Virus record (IMG/VR): IMGVR_UViG_2162886007_000107
Span: 124,001-188,000 of that record
Strand: one strand, 5' to 3'
DNA: 64,000 nucleotides
The position numbers and the translations under genes were made by a program. Positions 9,211-57,049 of this stretch are shown here, piece by piece (position 1 is the first letter of the stretch; every line of letters begins with the position of its first letter). The notes below the pieces were generated by a model, which did no database searches, had not been told where the DNA came from, and saw nothing but the letters and a program-made list of their open reading frames with translations.

Positions 9211-10869
9211 ATGTATCCCTTATTGGCCAAGCGCATAAAAGAAGACTACCCCGCATTCAATCAGACCATCATGGATGGGTTTCATATGAGAGAATTCGAG
9301 GGGGCTTTGCGTTACTATGACAATGCGCTGAGGATTATTTTCAAGAGTATTGAAAAGCGAGGGGTATTTTTCATCCGAGTGGACCGGGTTAGTCCCCGCG
9401 AATATATCGAGTACGTCTCGCAGAGCAGTACAAAGATTTACGATATCCACAAGGAAACTATTTATCCTGTGAAGCTGGAGTTTCAGTACCAGGATAAATC
9501 GGGGGCCAGGATACCAATGTCGGCTTACACCATGTTGCCTTACTGTGATAAGTACGGTGATATCTGGTTACGTGGAGTTCACTACAGCTTGCAGATCGTG
9601 CTTGCTGAACAGGGACTTCCAGTCACAAAGGAAAACTCCTTGTTCGTCAAGGTCCTGGGATTCAAGTTCAAAATTGGTATCGAGCATTTCAACTTCGACT
9701 TTATCTTCAACGAGACTGGTCGGGTTACTACTCGTACTGAAAGTATCAACTTGGCTTGTAACCGTTTTTACAGTCCTACTGACTCCAGAAAAATTACCAG
9801 CAAGAACGTACCGATTCCTTTGTTGGCTTGGTATGTGTTTGCTGATATGGGCTTTAGCAAGGCCATGGATAAGTATGCTGAATGTGAGTATGAGGTTGGT
9901 CCAGTAGACGCACTCGTGGACGAGTGTAAGGCGTCTGAAGGCTGGTTAATCATCACACGATCAAGTAGTGCCAACAGTAAAGCGTTGGGTGACTACGTTC
10001 CATTGGATCTCGGGATTGCTGTACGTAATCGAAGCCGTAAGCGAGCGGCGCTGAGTACTCTGGGACTTCAGTATGTGACTGCTATGCAGTTTGTTATTGA
10101 TTGCATGTCGAGTTATTTTGACATCAGTCGTATTGACGATCCTGACTATTGGAAACTGTTGATCGGACGCACTTCTGTAAAGCAGGGCGATACCGACGAC
10201 TATGTCATGCGTTTGATGAATGATCACTTCGATTCGATCAATGATTACTTGGACGAGGATTCCATCAAGAAGTTTGCGTCGCAAAGCATCATGGCGGCAA
10301 ACATCTTCGATTTGTTCAACTTCATCATCAACAACCGTAGTGAGATTGTTCAGACTACTGACCGGGCAACCATGTTCCGTAAAGTGCTCTCCAGTCTTGA
10401 ATTCACGATGGACAAGTTGATTACAGCTGCGAACAACTTCAAGCACGATATAAAGAACAACTCTGAGTTGAGCCAGAAGAAAGTAAGTCGTTTCTTGAAC
10501 GGTCGTTTCCACATCAAGGAAATTGATAACGCACGTACCACTAACCTGATCCAAGAAGCCACTCCGACGGACGTGCCTTTTGTGGATTACATGTTGGGAT
10601 GTATACCCCAAGACAAAGTCTTTACGAGTTCTTCCAAGAACCGTAAGAAGGGGGACTTCGACGTGAATGATAGCGCCACGCACATTCACACCTCACAGCT
10701 GCTGATCAACAGTCACCTGCGAGTTTCGGGTCCTTGTCCAGACGGTCGAGGATGGTTACTCCCAAGTGTTTATCTTGTTGATGGTAAAGTAACTGCGCTT
10801 GATCCAAAGTACGCAGAGAAATATCAGCAGTGGGATAACCGCTTACGATATAGAGAAGAGAGAAAATGA
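9211..10869 (+). CDS. non-virion RNA polymerase beta-subunit, N-terminal part (phiKZ gp123-like)
   Basis: AGGAG RBS then ATG 9211 (MYPLLAK); MLPYCDKYGDIWLRGVHYSLQIVL resembles the RpoB motif 'lP.mT..GtFiinG.ervivsql'; canonical position two genes after the capsid. Confidence 0.75.
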   Translation: MYPLLAKRIKEDYPAFNQTIMDGFHMREFEGALRYYDNALRIIFKSIEKRGVFFIRVDRVSPREYIEYVSQSSTKIYDIHKETIYPVKLEFQYQDKSGARIPMSAYTMLPYCDKYGDIWLRGVHYSLQIVLAEQGLPVTKENSLFVKVLGFKFKIGIEHFNFDFIFNETGRVTTRTESINLACNRFYSPTDSRKITSKNVPIPLLAWYVFADMGFSKAMDKYAECEYEVGPVDALVDECKASEGWLIITRSSSANSKALGDYVPLDLGIAVRNRSRKRAALSTLGLQYVTAMQFVIDCMSSYFDISRIDDPDYWKLLIGRTSVKQGDTDDYVMRLMNDHFDSINDYLDEDSIKKFASQSIMAANIFDLFNFIINNRSEIVQTTDRATMFRKVLSSLEFTMDKLITAANNFKHDIKNNSELSQKKVSRFLNGRFHIKEIDNARTTNLIQEATPTDVPFVDYMLGCIPQDKVFTSSSKNRKKGDFDVNDSATHIHTSQLLINSHLRVSGPCPDGRGWLLPSVYLVDGKVTALDPKYAEKYQQWDNRLRYREERK

Positions 10870-13217
10870 CAGACTCCCTTATTCCACGCAGGAATAGTCT
10901 TGGAGCAGCCGGTGTTTCTGTAAATACCGGCGGTGGGCATCCGGGATTCGGGGCCACCAACGCACCAGGCACGCAACAACAATCGTTTACCACCCCAGGC
11001 GCCATGCTCAGGCAGTATCTGAGCGGCCAGGGTGGCGGTGGCGGCGCTACGTCGTCATTCAACTGGAAGTCACACAATGGCGGGTTAGAGTCTAGCGAAG
11101 CATTGGGCAAGATGCTCAATGGCGCAGAGGTCGATGATAAGTCCACGAAAGAGTACTACATCGACAAAGTGGCGCAGTTTATGTTCCACTTCTCTGACTC
11201 GATCATGCGTAACAAACACCAGACTTACTTCTATCAGCACTTCATTGAGGTGCGTGATAACTTCGTCGTAGACCAGCAGCTTCAAACTGTCTGTGCTGTG
11301 AAGAAGGATTTTGTTGAATCCATCATTAAGGTGCATGATTTCAAGCGCGTTGTGGGATTCAACGGATCGATCGTGTTCGGCTACATGCTGATTGATCAAC
11401 TGAAGAAAACTGGTGCTGACGACTGGACGGAGCGTGAGGTGCATTCTGCTTGCCAATTGGCAGTCAGTCACATTATGTCTTTCGAATTCGTCAACTGGTT
11501 AGTGAACACCAAGAAAGGTCGTACGTGGCATAACAGGCTACCGCCTAACGTAGATCGTTCGCTCGGCAATCTGGAGGGTTTGAAAGACCAGTTTGCTGAG
11601 ATGTGGGAAATGTTTGATGTTCCCTTTCCATATGCTAACTTGTCGTTCGCTAAGACGACCAGCGCGCCTATGGAGTATCACCGTGTATTTAACCCAAATG
11701 AATACGGCGATACATTCGGTCGGATCCCTGGGGATTATAACCCAGCGCCCCGCACTGATAATGACAGTGTACTTGCATTAGTAGCTCGAAATGCGCAATT
11801 ACGTAAACGGGTTGTCGAAGAACCCAGGCAAGACGTAGCCGCCGCTCAATACCAGGACATTTATAACGAGGTTGGAATAACTGTGAATACCATTCGCTAC
11901 GATTTCCCCAATATCAATCCGCAGAACATGGATCAATTCGATTGGCGCAAAGAGTTCCGCCCGATCGGTAAAGAAAACCACTACTGGGTCTGTGAAAGTT
12001 CCTGGCTGCACCTCCAGAAGCTTTTCCAACGCCACCCCGAGCAGCGTCAGGAAGAAGCCGTCGGTTCTGGCGTATTCCGCGTAATCGTCATCGATCTGGA
12101 TGGTGCTCGGTCGTGGAACTCCTTCACTGTCCGTAACGAGAAACTCACCGTGCAATATGTGATGAGCAATCCGGAACGACTGCTGCCTCTGCTGGAGAAG
12201 AGTCCAGACGAAGACGCGGTCTATGCTGTACAAGTGACGCCGGTAGAAATTGTCGACGTCAACAACAAGCTGGAAGTTCCAGTTGAAATGGTCAAGGAAC
12301 TGGGCGATGGTATCCCGGTCATTGCTGTAAACCAAACTTTGGTTGCCACCTCTACTCAAGAGCTGCTGACCAACGTTGACCTGACCACCATCAGCCTGAC
12401 CAAAAATCTGAAAGGCACCTCGGCCGTTTCATTCAACCTGGGTGAGTGGGATACCTACTCTCTGAAACCAGATCAGCAGAATGTCAAAGTCCGCATGCTC
12501 CAGGACCTGCCATTCTTGTTCAACGACTCTGGCGATAAAGGCAAGAACGTAAGTATGTATCAGGCTGGTCGTAAGCTGATCAACTACTTCAACGAAAACA
12601 TCCTGCCTGAAGGTCTGTCCAAGTTCATCAACGCTCGTCTGATGAACATTGTTAACGAATGGCTCGTTAACGAAATGGGTTACAACGTGCTGGCCAACAA
12701 AGGTGGTGGCGGTAAGCTGCAAATCTCCAACTTTGTGGGCGACCTGGAAGATCTCAACGGCTACCTGAAAGCCAAAGACCCAATGGCTTACGAACTGTTC
12801 CACGATGGTTCGAAAGACAACTACCTCACCAAGGGTCTGAAGGTTTTCTACTACAACAATCCATTCGGGGTAGACCCGGAAGAAATGGAAGCACTGGATC
12901 GTCTGAAGTCGGAAATCACCTTGTACGTTGTCCGCGACATCTTCATGGTGAACGTGGTTGGCGACAAAGGTCCGTTGTACTCCGAAGAAAATGCTCCTGT
13001 GTACATTCGTCGTAGTGTGTGGCCGGAAATCTTCCGGATGATCGAAGATGCTTTCGACAAGACCACCGAAAACAATTTCGACACCACTGACAAGGTGATT
13101 CGTTACGGTGAGTCGGGTAACTTGTGGCTGTTCAGTTACACCAACGAAGATCGCAACGTTGCAACTCTGCGTCACATCTCGAATGGTAAGCCTCTGGTTC
13201 TGATGGCTCAGAACTAA
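10866..13217 (+). CDS. conserved jumbo-phage hypothetical protein
   Basis: 783 aa, ATGA overlap with the RNAP gene, Gly-rich N-terminus. Confidence 0.8.
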   Translation: MTDSLIPRRNSLGAAGVSVNTGGGHPGFGATNAPGTQQQSFTTPGAMLRQYLSGQGGGGGATSSFNWKSHNGGLESSEALGKMLNGAEVDDKSTKEYYIDKVAQFMFHFSDSIMRNKHQTYFYQHFIEVRDNFVVDQQLQTVCAVKKDFVESIIKVHDFKRVVGFNGSIVFGYMLIDQLKKTGADDWTEREVHSACQLAVSHIMSFEFVNWLVNTKKGRTWHNRLPPNVDRSLGNLEGLKDQFAEMWEMFDVPFPYANLSFAKTTSAPMEYHRVFNPNEYGDTFGRIPGDYNPAPRTDNDSVLALVARNAQLRKRVVEEPRQDVAAAQYQDIYNEVGITVNTIRYDFPNINPQNMDQFDWRKEFRPIGKENHYWVCESSWLHLQKLFQRHPEQRQEEAVGSGVFRVIVIDLDGARSWNSFTVRNEKLTVQYVMSNPERLLPLLEKSPDEDAVYAVQVTPVEIVDVNNKLEVPVEMVKELGDGIPVIAVNQTLVATSTQELLTNVDLTTISLTKNLKGTSAVSFNLGEWDTYSLKPDQQNVKVRMLQDLPFLFNDSGDKGKNVSMYQAGRKLINYFNENILPEGLSKFINARLMNIVNEWLVNEMGYNVLANKGGGGKLQISNFVGDLEDLNGYLKAKDPMAYELFHDGSKDNYLTKGLKVFYYNNPFGVDPEEMEALDRLKSEITLYVVRDIFMVNVVGDKGPLYSEENAPVYIRRSVWPEIFRMIEDAFDKTTENNFDTTDKVIRYGESGNLWLFSYTNEDRNVATLRHISNGKPLVLMAQN

Positions 13218-51167: not shown

Positions 51168-51608
51168 ATGGATCGTGATTACAGCTACATACAGGTGTCT
51201 CTAAGAGACGATCTCGTACAGGACGTATATAGCCAGCTCATTGAGATTGGCGTTGCTCCTAACGACAAGTACGACCTCCACACAACCATCATGTTTGATG
51301 AGCGTGATCTGGTTGCTCCTTTCTGTGAATTGGAACCTAACAAGGAATTCGTTGCCAAGATCAACGGTATGGGTAAATTGGGGGATGCTTACGTATTCCA
51401 CCTTTATAGTCCGCAACTGCACGAGGCTTTTACCAAGCTTACTGAAGCCGGCTACGAGCATTCGTACGGTACTCCGTTGTGGCATCTGTCTTTGGCATAC
51501 AAGCTGGATGATTTCCAATACCTATCCATTGACCATGCATTTGCTCATTGGATGGGTCGTGAGATCGTGTTGCGCAATATGGCGTTTGGTTTTAAGAAGA
51601 ATAAGTGA
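51168..51608 (+). CDS. acb1: 2H phosphodiesterase, T4 gp57B / anti-CBASS Acb1-like
   Basis: Two HxT/S motifs: LHTTIMF (H38) and HSYGTPLWHLSLAY (H106), paralleling T4 57B IHSTICY and HDFDDYTPHITLSY as recalled; 146 aa. Confidence 0.7.
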   Translation: MDRDYSYIQVSLRDDLVQDVYSQLIEIGVAPNDKYDLHTTIMFDERDLVAPFCELEPNKEFVAKINGMGKLGDAYVFHLYSPQLHEAFTKLTEAGYEHSYGTPLWHLSLAYKLDDFQYLSIDHAFAHWMGREIVLRNMAFGFKKNK

Positions 51609-51617
51609 GGCTGGAAA

Positions 51618-51650
51618 TTTAACTTCTAGGATTAGACACGTCTATATTAC
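51618..51650 (+). promoter_or_regulatory. phiKZ-type early promoter
   Basis: TTTAACTTCT-N12-GTCTATATTAC, same boxes and spacing as 13293. Confidence 0.75.
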
Positions 51651-51717
51651 TCCCGTGTATGAATGACAAAGGTTTTTAATAATTGCCTTGTCTCAACTGA
51701 TAGCCGCGGGAGGCTCC

Positions 51718-52833
51718 ATGTTTCAAATAGACACGATCGTAGAAGCGGTAACCAAGCACTCCAAGGTCGAGGACGATCTGGCTGCGGCTATCGTTGGGTT
51801 CTATCTGCTGGACATCAAGTTCATTGCAGTAAACCAACGCAAGAAAGTTCTGGATGCGCTGAAAGAACGTTTGGGTAAAACCTGGACTATCAGCAAGATC
51901 CGTGGTGTCAATCCAAAGATCTTGGGTGATCTGCAATTGCCATCGAAAGAACAACCGGTAACTGGCGATAACGTCAGCCCGACTCACAAAGTCGAGGTCA
52001 CCCCAAATGCCGCTCTGCAATACGAGTGGCCAGAAGGGCAAGGTCCGACAGCCGTCCAACACCAAACCAACACCAACACCATTTCGCACTCCGAGGAAAC
52101 CAGCATGACCAACACCGCCATCACTCTGACCTCCGCCCCTGAAGTTATCCTGGCGCACGTCAAAGAAAACAAGAAGGCCATCAAGGCCCAGGTCGAAGAT
52201 TTCAAAGAGCTGGTCGAATCCGACAAGAAGCGCAGCAAGGCCGTCCACAAGTGGATCGAAGCCGACGAAGATCGTGAAGAAGCCTGGAAAGCTTTCAACG
52301 CTCACCTCGACGGCGCGATCAAGGACAAAGACACCCTGCTGATCACCTTCGTTCGTCTGAGCGAAAAGCCGAAGAAAGAATTCCGCAGCCTGGAAAAAGC
52401 CATGAAGTCCAAAGCGAAAGAAATCGCTGAAGCCTCGGGTGAAGGTCGCAAAGACGTCGCAACCAGCTTCGGCCTGGGCGCAATCGTCGGTGGTCTCGGC
52501 AACATGTTCATGAACGGTTTCACGCCTGGTGCGGCAGTGGGTACCGCAGTGGCCGCTGGCGGCTGCTACTACCTCGGCACCAAGATCGACGAGCAAGGCG
52601 ACGACGACGGCATCGACAAGCGCGCTGGCGCCTTCCTGCTGGGCGGTGGTCTGGGCTACGGCGGTGCAGCTCTCGGCCGCATGGCTGAAGTGCATGTCAT
52701 CGAACAATACGCCGAATGGTTCGGCGGCAAGGAAGACGGCGAAGTTTCCGACAGCGTGTCGGTAGTCATCCACAACAACAACCTTCCGGCCGATAGCACT
52801 CAGAACTCTCTGCGTGCTCTGGGTCTGATCTAA
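51718..52833 (+). CDS. early coiled-coil / glycine-zipper membrane protein; possible internal start at 52105
   Basis: GGAGG RBS + ATG 51718; second GAGGA + ATG 52105; two Gly-rich hydrophobic helices near the C-terminus. Confidence 0.75.
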   Translation: MFQIDTIVEAVTKHSKVEDDLAAAIVGFYLLDIKFIAVNQRKKVLDALKERLGKTWTISKIRGVNPKILGDLQLPSKEQPVTGDNVSPTHKVEVTPNAALQYEWPEGQGPTAVQHQTNTNTISHSEETSMTNTAITLTSAPEVILAHVKENKKAIKAQVEDFKELVESDKKRSKAVHKWIEADEDREEAWKAFNAHLDGAIKDKDTLLITFVRLSEKPKKEFRSLEKAMKSKAKEIAEASGEGRKDVATSFGLGAIVGGLGNMFMNGFTPGAAVGTAVAAGGCYYLGTKIDEQGDDDGIDKRAGAFLLGGGLGYGGAALGRMAEVHVIEQYAEWFGGKEDGEVSDSVSVVIHNNNLPADSTQNSLRALGLI

Positions 52834-52840
52834 CCAGGTA

Positions 52841-52887
52841 TAGCAGAGTACCCCGTGGGGTACTCTGCTAGCACCCTTTTCTTTTTT
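52841..52887 (+). terminator. intrinsic terminator
   Basis: TAGCAGAGTACCC-CGTG-GGGTACTCTGCTA then T-rich tail. Confidence 0.8.
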
Positions 52888-52903
52888 GCTGCGAGGTCTA
52901 TTT

Positions 52904-53113
52904 ATGCAACATGTCGTTTTTGCAGTTCTCACTGTTCTCGGTAGTGCAGCACCGCAAGCGCCACAAGTTACAACCTTCAGAACGGATGACTGTAAGGCAG
53001 GCATGGAACAAGTAGTTCGTAGCTACAGCCTGCAACAGTTTGTTCGTTCTTGGTCCGTTAAAAGCATGACTGCCGATAACGGTAAACTTCATTTGAAAGT
53101 CACTTGTAATTAG
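52904..53113 (+). CDS. small exported protein
   Basis: GAGG RBS; hydrophobic N-terminus; two Cys. Confidence 0.65.
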   Translation: MQHVVFAVLTVLGSAAPQAPQVTTFRTDDCKAGMEQVVRSYSLQQFVRSWSVKSMTADNGKLHLKVTCN

Positions 53114-53123
53114 AGGGTATCCA

Positions 53124-53774
53124 ATGGATCTGTTTAATGTTTTGACTGACGAGGATAAATGCAAATCCATCGTCAAGTACTTCATGCTCAACTTCCTGAA
53201 ACAACCGTTCAACTATCGCCAAACAATCGCGCACAACAAATACCAGTTGGTGTTGGAATATTCCTGCACGTCGCGCGGTCCTAACTACGTCGTCGAGATT
53301 CTCAAGATGACTAGCGGCATGTTCACGCCTGGTCAGTTCAGTCCTGCTACTCAGCAGCGCATGGGCTTCCGTTACTTCCAGGATCGCGATGGTGTTCTGT
53401 CTTTGGGTCATGCCGAATGGCCAGAAGTTCTCGACGTTCTGGAAGACTTCCTGGTTAAGCAGTGCTGTGTCGTAGGTCCTTTGCAAGAGATCATTGCAGA
53501 GAAGACCAAAGACGCTACAGAAGCATCACAAGAGATCATCATCGGTGATGCGACCCTCTACGGAACTGTCGAGTACAATTCCAAAGAAGGCTACAGTCTT
53601 TATCTTGCAGGCGGAGATCCTTCTCGTCCAAGTGAAAAGATCATCATGAAAAGCATGGATACCAGTAAAGACGGTGTGCAATCAGGACTTGTGCGCGGTA
53701 ACCTCAAGGAGCTGGCAGGGAAGATTTTCGATATCCATAAGGACATCTGTAAACAACCCAAACGCGTGGAGTAA
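53124..53774 (+). CDS. hypothetical protein
   Basis: 216 aa, GAGGG RBS. Confidence 0.8.
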   Translation: MDLFNVLTDEDKCKSIVKYFMLNFLKQPFNYRQTIAHNKYQLVLEYSCTSRGPNYVVEILKMTSGMFTPGQFSPATQQRMGFRYFQDRDGVLSLGHAEWPEVLDVLEDFLVKQCCVVGPLQEIIAEKTKDATEASQEIIIGDATLYGTVEYNSKEGYSLYLAGGDPSRPSEKIIMKSMDTSKDGVQSGLVRGNLKELAGKIFDIHKDICKQPKRVE

Positions 53775-54886: not shown

Positions 54887-55327
54887 ATGACCATGAGTAA
54901 GCGGGACCAGTTATTCAATCAGGTGCTCGGTGATTTCAAAGAGTTTTTCAAAGTTCCTGTTCGTGATGGCATGGCTGACGCTCCTGTATTGAACGTTAGC
55001 AATAACAAGAAGTTTCCTAATCTTAACGGTCGTCATTTCCTGGCTGGTTATTCCACGCCCAATGATGTGAAGAACCGTGCAGAAGGCATTGCGTTTGTAG
55101 AGTACTTCCCTGACAGAATAGGGGTGCTCAATGTGCAGTGCATTATTCATATCTCTCCAACATCCGTACCGTCTGATGTATTAGGCTGTGAGGCAGGGGA
55201 AGATTCGGATCTTACCATTGGTGAGTGTGTGGAGTTATTCCGCATCCTGGGGGATTTCCTCACCAATTGGAAAATGGAACGTGAGTTCCTTACATCGGCA
55301 ATCCCTCCCACTACTACTAAACACTAA
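54887..55327 (+). CDS. hypothetical protein, LxG[RK]xF family
   Basis: PNLNGRHFLAG...GIAFVE. Confidence 0.75.
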   Translation: MTMSKRDQLFNQVLGDFKEFFKVPVRDGMADAPVLNVSNNKKFPNLNGRHFLAGYSTPNDVKNRAEGIAFVEYFPDRIGVLNVQCIIHISPTSVPSDVLGCEAGEDSDLTIGECVELFRILGDFLTNWKMEREFLTSAIPPTTTKH

Positions 55328-55338
55328 GAGAGTTAATC

Positions 55339-55761
55339 ATGCAAAAGTCTATCGAAGTAACCCAAGAATTCACCTTCGCAGAAGTTTACCGCGACCTGGT
55401 CTGGTTCGGTAATGAGTTTCAAAAATGTGCGGCAGTGAAGTTCGAAGCGAGTGGTGATCCATCCATTCCCGCCGATCTGAGCGGCCGTCAGTTCGTGTTC
55501 GAAACCCGCGTCGGTACCAACCGTGCTACTGGTAAATCTCTTGCCGGCATCCTGATCTACGAGGTCAAAGTCGACGGTCAGGAAGGCGAATACTTTGCCA
55601 GTGTTTCTCGCGACCTGGATCTGACAGAAGATCCTGAAGTTATCTTCGCTGATCCAGAGAATATGCTGACAGTAGAAAGTGTCGAAATGCTGCTGCTGGT
55701 GGTTCAGAAATCGGTAATCGAATTCCGCGGTGAACTCGACCAACCTAAGGTTGTTCATTAA
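55339..55761 (+). CDS. hypothetical protein, LxG[RK]xF family
   Basis: ADLSGRQFVFET...AGILIYE. Confidence 0.8.
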   Translation: MQKSIEVTQEFTFAEVYRDLVWFGNEFQKCAAVKFEASGDPSIPADLSGRQFVFETRVGTNRATGKSLAGILIYEVKVDGQEGEYFASVSRDLDLTEDPEVIFADPENMLTVESVEMLLLVVQKSVIEFRGELDQPKVVH

Positions 55762-55773
55762 GGAGGGGTAGTC

Positions 55774-56187
55774 GTGACTACTTCTGAACCTTTCATCGTG
55801 AAATACGCCAAGGACTTCAAACTTTGGCGTATCCACAAAACGTTCCTGAATTTCGGCTTGGCTACTCGTACCAAGCCCGAGGTTCGCTTCATGAAGAACA
55901 ATCAGACTCCAGCTATTCTTCAGGGTCGTGATTTTGTCTTCAGTACTGCTGAGGGTCTTGACTCTCAGAATAATAATCGCCCAGTGATCGGTGTACAAAT
56001 TACAGAACGTATCATGGGCATGGAAGTTGATTTGTGCAAGGTTGTGCAGTTCAAAGACGACAGATCGTCACCTGCGGTTGTAATGTTACTCGGTGGTAAC
56101 GTGTTGGAAGAAGCGTTCATTAAGGACGTTCTCAAAATTGCTGAAGCAGTTATCCGTAACCATCCGGACTACTTCGACCCTAATTAA
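55774..56187 (+). CDS. hypothetical protein, LxG[RK]xF family
   Basis: AILQGRDFVFST...IGVQITE; GGAGG RBS, GTG start. Confidence 0.8.
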   Translation: MTTSEPFIVKYAKDFKLWRIHKTFLNFGLATRTKPEVRFMKNNQTPAILQGRDFVFSTAEGLDSQNNNRPVIGVQITERIMGMEVDLCKVVQFKDDRSSPAVVMLLGGNVLEEAFIKDVLKIAEAVIRNHPDYFDPN

Positions 56188-56198
56188 GGAAGTCACCC

Positions 56199-56633
56199 AT
56201 GAAAACCCCTTTCTACGTTATTCAAGCGGAATCGCGTGCTCCTGGTGAAAGTGTTACCAAAGTCGGCTATCTGTACGTCGACTCCGAATGCGGTATCGTG
56301 TTTGCCGATCGTTTCAACAGCGGTGGTTGGTTCTACACCACCGAAGCCGCCATGCAGCGCTGGGATTTCATCATGAATGAAGAACCCACCAAGTACACCG
56401 CCGGCAGCCTCCCTGGCTATCAGTACGCCATCCCTCACGTGTTGCGCAGCGCTGTTGGTGGTCGGATCGATGTAGACGGCCGCTACGAGTTCACGTTCAA
56501 GCTGATCGAAGTCATCGGTCCTAGCCTGGACAAGATCGAAGTTACCGTGGTTCGTGAGGTGGAAGTTATCGCCATCCAGTTCCACAATGAGTACGACAAG
56601 AAACCGATCATCACCATCAACAACATCAAGTAA
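56199..56633 (+). CDS. hypothetical protein
   Basis: 144 aa, biased codons. Confidence 0.8.
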   Translation: MKTPFYVIQAESRAPGESVTKVGYLYVDSECGIVFADRFNSGGWFYTTEAAMQRWDFIMNEEPTKYTAGSLPGYQYAIPHVLRSAVGGRIDVDGRYEFTFKLIEVIGPSLDKIEVTVVREVEVIAIQFHNEYDKKPIITINNIK

Positions 56634-56641
56634 GGCTTGTC

Positions 56642-57049
56642 ATGGCTAAGGTATCGTTTAAAGAGATCCACACCAATCTGTCTACTTACATGGAAGCTCG
56701 TAAGGAATACCCTGTAGTTACTTTCGAAGACAACGAAACTGTTCTTCGTCAGCTGCGTGGTAAAAGTTTCATGTTCGCTGCCATGAAAGGTGAGGACAAG
56801 CACAAGAAACCACAACTGGGGATCATGGTCGTAGAAAAGACCCCAGTTGGTGGTAATCCAGTCTGTGCACTCACTGCGGCCGATAAAGCCAAAGATCGTC
56901 GATTCAAAGTGCAGTTCCAAGGCAAACTGCTGCTGCTGGACGAGGAAGTCAACGTCCTTCTCCAGCAACTGGGTAACCGTATGAAGGCTGCGGCTCTTAC
57001 CAGTAATCTGGCACAAGGAGCTTCTGATGGCTCGCAAACAACGCAATAA
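56642..57049 (+). CDS. hypothetical protein, LxG[RK]xF family
   Basis: RQLRGKSFMFAA...LGIMVVE. Confidence 0.75.
   Translation: MAKVSFKEIHTNLSTYMEARKEYPVVTFEDNETVLRQLRGKSFMFAAMKGEDKHKKPQLGIMVVEKTPVGGNPVCALTAADKAKDRRFKVQFQGKLLLLDEEVNVLLQQLGNRMKAAALTSNLAQGASDGSQTTQ

What the first reader, a model, noticed from the sequence alone, without database searches (positions are those of the whole stretch)
51618..52833. Early-promoter gene with a probable internal second start, encoding a coiled-coil plus glycine-zipper membrane protein
Seen: a stand-alone unit (early promoter 51618, terminator 52841). The ORF has GGAGG-ATG at 51718 and a second strong GAGGA-N7-ATG at 52105, preceded by an unstructured A/C-rich tract (CAACACCAAACCAACACCAACACC) that looks like a 5' UTR. 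Codon usage after 52105 appears capsid-like in bias. The C-terminal 242 aa has a K/E coiled coil and two Gly-rich hydrophobic helices (FGLGAIVGGLG..GAAVGTAVAAGG; AGAFLLGGGLGYGGAALG). Inference: two in-frame isoforms, or a recent read-through fusion, producing an abundant early membrane protein. Candidate roles are pore formation, superinfection exclusion, or membrane remodelling for the early infection vesicle described in Chimalliviridae.
Basis: partly seen in the sequence, partly recalled or inferred. Interest (0 to 1): 0.7.

Follow-up and report, generated by a model that had tools for sequence, protein, structure and literature searches.

The report
Nested two-start early phage gene
An early, stand-alone gene of a nucleus-forming jumbo phage very probably makes two proteins from one reading frame, a rare 40-kDa form and a very abundant 26-kDa form started at a conserved internal ribosome-binding site; the protein family is uncharacterised, and it is not shown to sit in a membrane.

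Summary
Window 51718-52833 (+) is a 371-aa ORF with its own early-promoter motif and a strong terminator. It lies in a 236-kb chimallivirus that encodes chimallin, PhuZ and a phiKZ-type capsid protein.

The internal GAGGA-N7-ATG at 52105 is ordinary on its own: it falls in the top 4% of internal ATGs in this genome. Comparison makes it convincing. All 12 other loci, including Pseudomonas phage EL gp127 and Erwinia phage RisingSun gp122 (17-44% identity apart from one 91% copy), keep these features:
- a Met in the otherwise unalignable linker;
- a Shine-Dalgarno-like element 6-10 nt upstream (weak in two loci);
- placement in the least-folded, A/C-rich part of the ORF.

Codon bias rises at that point from ordinary (-0.12) to chimallin/capsid level (+0.33; permutation p<1e-4). 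The same step is significant in all 10 metagenomic homologues. It follows the Met even where the upstream part is 228-296 codons long.

The N-terminal domain is conserved and under purifying selection, so a recent fusion is rejected.

Membrane insertion is not established. The Gly-rich helices are only borderline hydrophobic, and no fold, Pfam or PHROG match exists. The family was not found in phiKZ, 201phi2-1 or Goslar, so a core role in the early infection vesicle is unlikely.

The parts
51618..51650 (+). Early-promoter motif: TTTAACTTCTAGG (51618-51630), 10 nt, TCTATATTAC (51641-51650)
   Evidence: TATATTAC occurs 12 times in the genome, all on the + strand; the eight copies that also carry the upstream box were checked and are intergenic. 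The same bipartite motif lies about 70-90 nt upstream of every homologue that retains upstream DNA. EL's annotated 'putative phage promoter' is the cognate CCTACATTA motif. A conserved AT-rich motif centred near -10 of early operons is the accepted virion-RNAP promoter signature in these phages (PMC7598289).
51665..51692 (+). Small 5'-UTR hairpin (GACAA(A)GG / CCTTGTC)
   Evidence: A 5-8 bp hairpin sits at the same place in the leader of most family members, with different stem sequences. Each alone is weak (z -0.8 to -2.4; +0.1 in EL). MAFFT/RNAalifold found no consensus.
51708..51720 (+). First ribosome-binding site: GGGAGG, 4 nt, ATG 51718
   Evidence: SD duplex -10.3 kcal/mol, stronger than 98% of called starts. 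Homologues have AGGAG/GGAGG before their first ATG.
51718..52833 (+). Long-form ORF: 371 aa, 40.1 kDa
   Evidence: Family members of 344-510 aa.
51718..51951 (+). N-terminal helical domain (aa 1-78), present only in the long form
   Evidence: AF2 pLDDT 64-85. Conserved across the family, with M1 and R41 invariant and A24, D32, L45 and L69 nearly so. dN/dS 0.15 versus L002. Ordinary codon bias.
51952..52104 (+). Disordered, variable linker (aa 79-129), including the A/C-rich tract at 52057-52080
   Evidence: pLDDT below 30. Unalignable between subfamilies and 40 to about 220 aa long. dN/dS 0.52. The 60 nt upstream of the internal ATG are 78% A+C versus 55% for the ORF.
52093..52107 (+). Internal ribosome-binding site: GAGGA(A), 7 nt after GAGGA, ATG 52105
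   Evidence: SD -5.9 kcal/mol. The -30..+30 fold is -5.5 versus an ORF mean of -13.7, within the least-folded 6%. Unpaired probability is 0.70 versus 0.45 at the first ATG. GAGGAA-N6-ATG is identical in L003, L004 and L005; RisingSun has GAGGAT-N6-ATG; EL has GGAG-N6-ATG.
52105..52833 (+). Short-form ORF: 242 aa, 25.9 kDa. Inferred to be the abundant product.
   Evidence: Codon bias +0.33, equal to chimallin and the capsid protein. The change point is at codon 112 (interval 109-128).
52138..52434 (+). K/E-rich helical domain (aa 141-239)
   Evidence: Six helices of 10-22 residues, pLDDT mostly 69-83 (last block 59). 25 K+R and 22 D+E in aa 136-245. No fold match above noise.
52456..52722 (+). 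Three Gly/Ala-rich 'glycine-zipper' helices (aa 247-266, 270-293, 299-335) with an acidic loop between the second and third
   Evidence: G275, G309, G313 and G320 are invariant in all 13 sequences; G259 and G316 are nearly so; G267 is invariant among the 11 metagenomic members. pLDDT 52-69. Hydropathy is borderline.
52723..52830 (+). Disordered C-terminal tail with a conserved VV(A/I)-x-(V)P(A) stretch and a hydrophobic last peptide
52841..52887 (+). Intrinsic terminator: 13-bp hairpin at 52841-52870, T-run at 52877-52887
   Evidence: -27.1 kcal/mol. The simple scanner missed it because 6 nt separate the stem from the T-run. Hairpins of -17 to -33 kcal/mol follow the gene in every homologue except EL. 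An RNA contig ends at 52882.

Best explanation
This is a conserved, monocistronic early gene of the EL/RisingSun branch of nucleus-forming jumbo phages (Chimalliviridae). It works as a nested, gene-in-gene locus.

One mRNA runs from the virion-RNA-polymerase promoter motif at 51618-51650 to the terminator at 52841-52887. It is translated from two in-frame starts:
- ATG 51718 gives a 371-aa long form.
- ATG 52105 gives a 242-aa short form. This start is served by GAGGA-N7 in an unstructured A/C-rich stretch of the disordered linker.

The short form is made in far larger amounts, on the scale of chimallin or the capsid protein. Both forms share a K/E-rich helical domain, three glycine-zipper helices and a tail. 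I infer that this shared module self-assembles, possibly at the inner membrane. The rarer long form would join the same assembly and add a 78-aa helical N-domain on a flexible tether. Lambda C/Nu3 and the full-length/short endolysin isoforms work this way.

Shown: the sequence signals, their conservation, the codon-bias step, purifying selection on both parts, and a bounded, abundant transcript.

Inferred: use of the internal start, the ratio of the two forms, co-assembly, and membrane association.
For: 1. The internal initiation site is kept in every family member although the linker cannot be aligned.
- GAGGAA-N6-ATG occurs in the window, L002, L003, L004 and L005. GAGGAT-N6-ATG occurs in RisingSun gp122 and GGAG-N6-ATG in EL gp127.
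- AAGAGG, CCGAGG, AAGGAA or TGGAG lie at N8-9 in L008-L011.
- Only weak AAGAGA is present in L006 and L007.

2. In all 11 loci tested, the ATG lies in the least-folded 3-10% of 60-nt windows of its ORF. The upstream 60 nt are 58-78% A+C.

3. In all 12 lineages the internal site is more accessible than the first start. Mean unpaired probability is 0.65 versus 0.42, and mean fold energy is -3.7 versus -8.9 kcal/mol.

4. Codon bias steps from -0.12 to +0.33 (p<1e-4). The same step occurs in all 10 metagenomic homologues (p<=0.0035 each).

5. Its change point follows the Met rather than the end of the N-domain at about codon 80: 112 versus Met130, 155 versus Met166, 220 versus Met230, 278 versus Met298, 113 versus Met119.

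6. The bias axis is anchored on chimallin, the major capsid protein, an internal head protein, the tail sheath and PhuZ.

7. The N-domain is truly coding and functional: conserved residues, dN/dS 0.15, and a strong SD.

8. In RNA-Seq run X6, contigs cover 51690-52327 and 52534-52882. Coverage is zero over most of the upstream gene and its intergenic region (51169-51669) and over 53006-53500. Depth is 6.6-13.7, against 8-10 on chimallin in the same run, with no excess over the 3' part.

9. Every homologue that retains upstream DNA has its own promoter motif, and all but EL have a terminator hairpin.
Against: - No protein-level data exist. Ribo-seq, N-terminal proteomics and western blots are all missing.
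- The SD at 52105 is only median strength, and about 4% of internal ATGs in this genome look as good.
- Two homologues (L006, L007) have a weak SD (-2.9).
- EL shows no codon step when scored with this genome's table.
- The target's step ranks 4th of 134 genes, so it is not unique in the genome.
- The A/C-rich, unfolded context could partly follow from the T/N/Q/A-rich composition of a disordered linker.
- C-ending codons in that tract may pull the change point 10-20 codons upstream of the ATG.
- RNA evidence is assembler word depth from runs chosen because they hold this gene.
- The tetramer prediction gave no answer.
- The Gly-rich helices are poor transmembrane candidates on the Hessa scale.
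Confidence: 0.7

Rival explanations
1. There is a single product from ATG 51718 only. The linker Met and purine run are a conserved peptide motif (E-E-x-x-M-[ST]-N). The codon-bias step reflects different selection on two domains of one polypeptide.
For: The internal SD is of median strength, and about 4% of internal ATGs look as good. EExxM[ST]N is also conserved as a peptide in subfamily 1. Disordered linkers are naturally A/C-rich and unfolded.
Against: One polypeptide is translated at one rate, so a step from ordinary to chimallin-level bias is unexpected. The N-domain is as constrained as the helical domain (dN/dS 0.15 versus 0.18) yet has ordinary bias, which argues against an accuracy-selection effect. 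A 5' ramp cannot span 110-296 codons. In subfamily 2 the peptide around the Met differs, but the Met, the upstream purine run and the open structure persist. Glu-Glu is written GAG-GAA in all four independent subfamily-1 lineages, although GAA is preferred 0.71 to 0.29.
Confidence: 0.15
2. Two products are made, but the short one comes from a second, shorter RNA (an internal middle/late promoter or a processed transcript) rather than from internal initiation on the full-length mRNA.
For: Chimallivirus middle and late promoters have almost no recognisable consensus (PMC7598289), so one cannot be excluded by sequence. A shorter RNA would still use the same SD and ATG.
Against: In RNA run X6, depth over the 5' part (13.7 and 9.3) is not lower than over the 3' part (6.6). 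The late-promoter TATG motif is absent from the 100 nt before 52105. No DNA motif other than the SD is shared upstream of the linker Met among homologues.
Confidence: 0.1
3. It is a recent read-through fusion of two formerly separate genes. The internal SD and ATG are a decaying relic.
For: The internal start looks like the start of an ordinary gene. The two parts differ in GC3 (0.59 versus 0.71).
Against: The two parts are collinear in one ORF in all 13 family members, including EL and RisingSun at 17% identity. No homologue has a stop between them. The signal has not decayed in any lineage. An ancient fusion whose internal start stayed in use is not excluded, and it is compatible with the best explanation.
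Confidence: 0.03
4. The protein is a lysis or pore protein of the holin/antiholin type that uses a dual start for timing.
For: It has dual in-frame starts and Gly-rich hydrophobic helices. There is a faint PHROG hit to an Rz-like spanin (E 0.063).
Against: It has an early promoter and no neighbouring lysis genes. The starts are 129 codons apart rather than 2-3. The product is 242-371 aa, mostly soluble and helical. Hydrophobicity is below transmembrane thresholds. The PHROG hit is not significant and falls in the K/E-rich helices.
Confidence: 0.03

Closest known systems
Lambda C/Nu3 (protease/scaffold) nested genes, and T7 gene 4A/4B (from general knowledge)
   Same: An in-frame internal SD and ATG inside a longer ORF. 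The short C-terminal product is made in excess, and the long product shares its C-terminal module. The inferred logic is the same: the abundant short form builds the assembly, and the rare long form is carried into it.
   Different: There is no sequence or fold relation. This gene is early rather than a morphogenesis gene. Its products have not been detected, and co-assembly is inferred only.
Endolysin isoforms from internal translational start sites, e.g. phage phi2638A (PMC12203907), and the dual-isoform Fha of Vibrio cholerae (PMC13389060)
   Same: Gene-in-gene coding gives a full-length and a short C-terminal isoform that act together.
   Different: Those proteins have known activities (cell-wall binding and lysis; a T6SS scaffold). 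This family has no recognisable domain.
Glycine-zipper proteins (Pfam Gly-zipper_Omp PF13488, Gly-zipper_YMGG PF13441)
   Same: Runs of GxxxG/GxxxA in Gly/Ala-rich helices. The language-model search listed such clusters at low score (0.65).
   Different: No HMM match at E<=0.1 in any of 11 members. There is no signal peptide or lipobox. The helices are preceded by a 100-aa cytoplasmic-type helical domain.
Pseudomonas phage EL gp127 and Erwinia phage RisingSun gp122 (both annotated as hypothetical proteins)
   Same: They belong to the same family: hhalign probability 99% (E 5e-18) and 97% (E 1e-11), HMM E 9e-21 and 5e-11. They have the same genome position after the Acb1-like gene (one gene intervenes in RisingSun), the same promoter motif and the same linker SD-ATG.
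   Different: 17% identity. EL lacks a clear terminator and shows no codon step when scored with this genome's table. Neither has been studied. RisingSun gp122 was not among the proteins detected in a crude lysate (PMC6034870).

Membership tests
Nested in-frame dual-start (gene-in-gene) genes | In-frame internal start codon with a Shine-Dalgarno element at functional spacing | tested here: met
   GAGGA-N7-ATG at 52093-52107, -5.9 kcal/mol.
Nested in-frame dual-start (gene-in-gene) genes | The internal start signal is conserved among homologues beyond what the protein sequence requires | tested here: met
   It is present in 12 other loci within an unalignable linker, and weak in 2 of them. GAG-GAA codon choice and 6-nt spacing are identical in four independent lineages.
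Nested in-frame dual-start (gene-in-gene) genes | Evidence that the downstream part is expressed differently from the upstream part | tested here: met
   The codon-bias step has p<1e-4 here and is significant in 10 of 10 metagenomic homologues. The change point follows the Met. This is indirect evidence.
Nested in-frame dual-start (gene-in-gene) genes | Both polypeptides are detected | not testable with these tools
   No proteomic or ribosome-profiling data were found for this phage, EL gp127 or RisingSun gp122.
Nested in-frame dual-start (gene-in-gene) genes | The isoforms co-assemble through the shared module | tested here: inconclusive
   The tetramer prediction of aa 136-340 returned 'no answer' (score 0.00).
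Chimallivirus early (virion-RNAP) transcription units | A conserved AT-rich motif upstream of early operons, on one strand and intergenic | tested here: met
   There are 12 TATATTAC copies, all on the + strand. The eight with the upstream box are intergenic. Definition from PMC7598289. PhuZ also carries the motif.
Chimallivirus early (virion-RNAP) transcription units | A mapped transcription start and early timing | not testable with these tools
   There is only a metatranscriptome contig beginning at 51690 and ending at 52882.
Integral membrane protein with glycine-zipper transmembrane helices | At least one segment hydrophobic enough for a transmembrane helix | tested here: inconclusive
   The Kyte-Doolittle 19-residue maximum is 1.39 here and 1.39-1.88 across the family (usual threshold 1.6). 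Summed Hessa values are +2.4 to +4.6 kcal/mol. Most homologues have D/E inside the first helix.
Integral membrane protein with glycine-zipper transmembrane helices | Match to a curated glycine-zipper family | tested here: not met
   No Pfam Gly-zipper hit at E<=0.1 in 11 members. PDB profile search found nothing relevant.
Holin/antiholin dual-start lysis proteins | A small transmembrane protein with starts a few codons apart, in a late lysis cassette | tested here: not met
   It has an early promoter, a 129-codon offset, 242-371 aa and no lysis neighbours.
Coiled-coil protein | Long continuous helices with heptad packing | tested here: inconclusive
   The AF2 model has six helices of 10-22 residues in aa 141-239. 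The model's mean pLDDT is only 59.5. No heptad analysis was run.

The most novel reading that the evidence does not exclude
The short isoform is a previously unrecognised, chimallin-level abundant early structural protein of the EL/RisingSun branch. It would build a self-assembled, possibly membrane-attached layer or channel array early in infection. Sub-stoichiometric long-form subunits would display an adaptor N-domain on a flexible tether. That would be a clade-specific addition to the chimallivirus infection architecture, possibly linked to the neighbouring Acb1-like anti-CBASS gene as a second counter-defence function.
Probability: 0.2. Interest if true: 0.8.

Novelty: new member of a known kind. 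Interest (0 to 1): 0.55.

Why it matters
Nucleus-forming jumbo phages are studied intensively, yet most of their early genes have no known function. This family appears to be expressed at the level of the nuclear-shell protein. It has its own promoter and terminator in every relative that retains the flanking DNA (EL lacks a clear terminator). It carries one of the clearer purely computational signatures of gene-in-gene coding: a conserved internal ribosome site plus a codon-bias step that moves with it across relatives. Culturable members exist (Pseudomonas phage EL gp127 and Erwinia phage RisingSun gp122), so the two-isoform prediction and the localisation can be tested directly. The codon-bias change-point test could also be used to screen phage genomes for nested genes. 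The genome's second-largest internal step, at window 10866-13217, is a candidate.

Tried and rejected
**Searches that found nothing**
- megablast and tblastn of the gene against 50,697 phage records: no match. Relatives came only from the HMMER search of 1.8 billion representatives.
- Word-indexed search with the single protein and with the alignment: only self, the 91% copy and P0012.
- The search for related loci: the first alignment was too divergent. Subfamily alignments gave one extra locus (L029) and none.
- Pfam, PHROGs and the PDB sequence profile: nothing significant.

**Structure and complex predictions**
- AF2 with 11 sequences: mean pLDDT 59.5.
- Fold searches: BFVD best E 0.06, AFDB clusters best E 0.14, PDB Foldseek best E 1.1, ESM Atlas TM by the model <=0.26, VIA-wide Z<=6.1. 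All are below noise for helical models.
- Several death-fold (PYD/CARD) chains appear at Z 4.6-5.7 for aa 151-249. I treat this as a lead only.
- Protein atlas: best score 0.69, which is uninformative.
- Tetramer prediction: no answer.

**RNA and neighbouring genes**
- RNAalifold on the 5' leaders: no consensus from the MAFFT alignment. Single-sequence folds show a small hairpin at the same position.
- The 69-aa downstream ORF was compared with RisingSun's 'Cor' gene and with EL gp128: unrelated.
- One call used a dummy 3-base reference by mistake.

**Interpretations rejected**
- The antisense 442-aa ORF as the real gene.
- A recent fusion, a holin, and a core role in the early infection vesicle.
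Full report
**What is there**

Window 51718-52833 (+) is a 371-aa ORF.
- TTTAACTTCTAGG at 51618-51630 and TCTATATTAC at 51641-51650;
- GGGAGG, 4 nt, then ATG at 51718;
- an A/C-rich tract at 52057-52080;
- GAGGA, 7 nt, then an in-frame ATG at 52105;
- TAA at 52831-52833;
- a 13-bp hairpin at 52841-52870 (-27 kcal/mol) followed by a T-run.

A longer antisense ORF (51676-53004, 442 aa) is an artefact. Its codon log-odds is 0.07 per codon, against 0.36 for the + strand.

**Genome context**

The window is bases 124001-188000 of a 236,430-bp virus record. The record encodes a chimallin nuclear-shell protein, PhuZ tubulin, a phiKZ-type major head protein, an internal head protein and a tail sheath. 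It is therefore a chimallivirus. By DNA ligase, its nearest named relatives are Pseudomonas phage EL (43%) and Erwinia phages RisingSun and Joad (40%).

**A stand-alone early unit**

TATATTAC occurs 12 times in the genome, always on the + strand. The eight copies with an upstream TTAACTT-type box were checked against the gene calls and are all intergenic. One copy precedes PhuZ.

This fits the published description of virion-RNAP early promoters in these phages: a roughly 10-nt AT-rich conserved motif centred near -10 (PMC7598289). EL's annotated 'putative phage promoter' (CCTACATTA) is the cognate motif, and it also precedes EL gp127.

Every homologous gene that retains upstream DNA carries the motif about 70-90 nt before its start. 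A hairpin of -17 to -33 kcal/mol follows its stop in all homologues but EL, with a T-run wherever the contig continues (short in RisingSun).

In a plant-metagenome RNA-Seq run that holds a >=99%-identical strain, contigs cover 51690-52327 and 52534-52882. Nothing covers most of the upstream gene (51169-51669) or 53006-53500. Their word depth (6.6-13.7) is like that on chimallin in the same run (8-10). This is contig depth from a run selected for holding the gene, so it is supportive only.

**The family**

Word-indexed and BLAST searches found only a 91% copy. An exhaustive HMMER search found 13 proteins. Ten loci were fetched and one more came from IMG/VR.

Profile comparison added two named phage proteins:
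- EL gp127: hhalign probability 99%, E 5e-18; HMM E 9e-21.
- RisingSun gp122: HMM E 5e-11 for the N part and 2e-6 for the C part.

The family was not detected in phiKZ, 201phi2-1 or Goslar.

All members share this architecture:
- a conserved N-terminal domain of about 80 aa;
- a variable linker of 40 to about 220 aa, with an extra inserted region in P0012 and P0014;
- a helical domain;
- three Gly/Ala-rich helices with invariant glycines;
- a tail.

P0013 lacks the N-domain only because its contig is cut. Collinearity down to 17-25% identity rules out a recent fusion, and so does dN/dS of 0.15 for the N-domain.

**The internal start**

Taken alone, the site at 52105 is unremarkable. It scores -5.9 kcal/mol, in the top 4% of 1,691 internal ATGs and equal to the median annotated start. 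The comparative picture is what counts.

In every family member a Met sits in the unalignable linker and is preceded by a purine-rich SD-like element:
- GAGGAA-N6-ATG in four independent lineages of subfamily 1;
- GAGGAT-N6-ATG in RisingSun;
- GGAG-N6-ATG in EL;
- AAGAGG, CCGAGG, AAGGAA or TGGAG at 8-9 nt in four others;
- only weak AAGAGA in two.

Glu-Glu is written GAG-GAA in all four subfamily-1 lineages, although highly expressed genes prefer GAA 0.71 to 0.29. By my arithmetic that is about 0.002 by chance.

In all 11 loci tested, the ATG lies in the least-folded 3-10% of the ORF's 60-nt windows, and the upstream 60 nt are 58-78% A+C. In all 12 lineages the internal site is more open than the first start. 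Mean unpaired probability is 0.65 versus 0.42, and mean local fold is -3.7 versus -8.9 kcal/mol. This offsets its weaker SD (-5.4 versus -7.4).

**The codon-bias step**

The first axis of synonymous codon usage (26% of variance) has chimallin, the major capsid protein, an internal head protein, the tail sheath and PhuZ at its top. The target ranks eighth from the top of that axis, among genes of at least about 150 codons.

I scored each codon by a log ratio trained on those five genes against the rest:
- codons 2-129 average -0.12, the 82nd percentile of genes;
- codons 131-371 average +0.33, the 99th percentile, against 0.35-0.36 for chimallin and the capsid protein;
- none of 10,000 within-amino-acid permutations reached that difference.

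All 10 metagenomic homologues show the same step with the same table (p<=0.0035 each).

Least-squares change points follow the linker Met, not the end of the N-domain:

| Locus | Change point (codon) | Linker Met (codon) |
|---|---|---|
| window | 112 | 130 |
| L003 | 155 | 166 |
| L004 | 220 | 230 |
| L005 | 278 | 298 |
| L011 | 113 | 119 |

A 5' ramp cannot span 110-296 codons. Selection for accuracy at conserved sites cannot explain the step either, because the N-domain is as constrained as the helical domain (dN/dS 0.15 versus 0.18).

Caveats:
- The step ranks 4th of 134 genes. Several higher or similar ones break at about codon 45 and probably reflect my over-long start calls. One (window 10866-13217) may be another nested gene.
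- EL shows no step with this genome's table.
- The C-ending codons of the A/C tract probably pull the change point a little upstream of the ATG.

**One RNA or two**

In the RNA run, depth is not higher over the 3' part than over the 5' part. The 100 nt before 52105 contain no late-promoter TATG. I therefore favour internal initiation on one mRNA, but a second RNA is not excluded.

**The protein**

The AF2 model was built from 11 sequences and has mean pLDDT 59.5:

| Residues | Feature | pLDDT |
|---|---|---|
| 1-78 | helical N-domain | 64-85 |
| 79-138 | disordered linker | below 30 for most of its length |
| 141-239 | six short helices | mostly 69-83 |
| 247-266, 270-293, 299-335 | Gly/Ala-rich helices | 52-69 |
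| 336-371 | disordered tail | below 40 |

So the internal Met lies in the disordered linker, just ahead of the shared module.

No sequence family or fold matches. This holds for Pfam, PHROGs, PDB profiles, BFVD, AFDB, PDB Foldseek, the ESM Atlas and VIA-wide (Z<=6.1).

The Gly-rich helices have glycine-zipper spacing, but their hydrophobicity is borderline. Kyte-Doolittle maxima are 1.39 here and 1.39-1.88 in the family. Summed Hessa values are +2.4 to +4.6 kcal/mol. Most homologues have D/E inside the first helix. Membrane insertion is thus possible but not shown. A tetramer prediction gave no answer.

RisingSun gp122 was not among the proteins seen in a crude lysate dominated by virion proteins (PMC6034870), so the protein is probably non-structural.

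**How it most likely works**

The signals, their conservation, the bias step and the bounded transcript are shown. The rest is inferred.

An early mRNA is read from two starts. The internal one yields a 25.9-kDa product at chimallin-like levels. The first yields a rarer 40.1-kDa product with an added N-domain on a flexible tether.

By analogy with lambda C/Nu3, T7 4A/4B and endolysin isoforms (PMC12203907), the shared helical and glycine-zipper module would self-assemble, perhaps on the inner membrane. It would carry a minority of long subunits into the assembly.

The conserved neighbour is an Acb1-like anti-CBASS phosphoesterase (Pfam E 8e-8). That hints at a counter-defence setting, but the two genes are separate transcription units.

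A core role in the early infection vesicle is unlikely. The family is missing from the model chimalliviruses in which the vesicle was described. The vesicle also receives the injected genome before early proteins exist (10.1101/2023.09.20.558163).

**Verdict**

- The two-isoform reading is well supported by comparison (confidence about 0.7).
- The recent-fusion reading is rejected.
- The abundant-early reading is supported.
- The membrane, pore and vesicle readings are unproven.
- This is a new, uncharacterised protein family that uses a known expression principle.

Noticed in passing
window 51168-51608 (+): The gene directly upstream is an Acb1-like 2H phosphoesterase, of the anti-CBASS cyclic-nucleotide-degrading type. 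Pfam PF23474 gives E 8e-8 and 32.6 bits against a cut-off of 27. PHROG 755 'RNA ligase' gives E 1e-12. It is the conserved upstream neighbour of the family in L002, L003, L006, L008, L010, L011 and EL (gp126), and is one gene away in L005 and RisingSun (gp120).
   Followed up: partly
window 52904-53113 (+): A 69-aa ORF has a signal-peptide-like N-terminus and two invariant cysteines (C30, C68). It is conserved immediately after the target's terminator in L007, L009/L029, L010 and L011, but absent in L003. It is unrelated to RisingSun's 'Cor' gene or to EL gp128.
   Followed up: partly
window 10866-13217 (+) (genome 134866-137217): This 782-aa ORF has the genome's second-largest internal codon-bias step, at about codon 352 (-0.54 to +0.04). 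It may be another nested or fused gene.
   Followed up: no
window 51665-51692 and the equivalent leaders of L003-L011, L029: A small 5-8 bp hairpin sits at a fixed distance after the promoter's TGTAT. The stem sequences differ between relatives, which looks compensatory. Each hairpin alone is weak (z -0.8 to -2.4).
   Followed up: partly
window 51676-53004 (-): An antisense ORF of 442 aa is longer than the real gene and spans the terminator. Its coding score is 0.07 per codon, so it is an artefact of the GC3-rich sense strand.
   Followed up: yes
window 54887-57049 (+): There is a run of five adjacent ORFs of 135-146 aa. They may be a paralogous array and were not examined.
   Followed up: no
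model residues 151-249 (window 52168-52464): Several death-fold chains (NLRP14 and NLRP2 PYD, NOD1 and ARC CARD, cPOP1) recur among the VIA-wide matches at Z 4.6-5.7. This is below the noise level for helical bundles, so it is a lead only.
   Followed up: no
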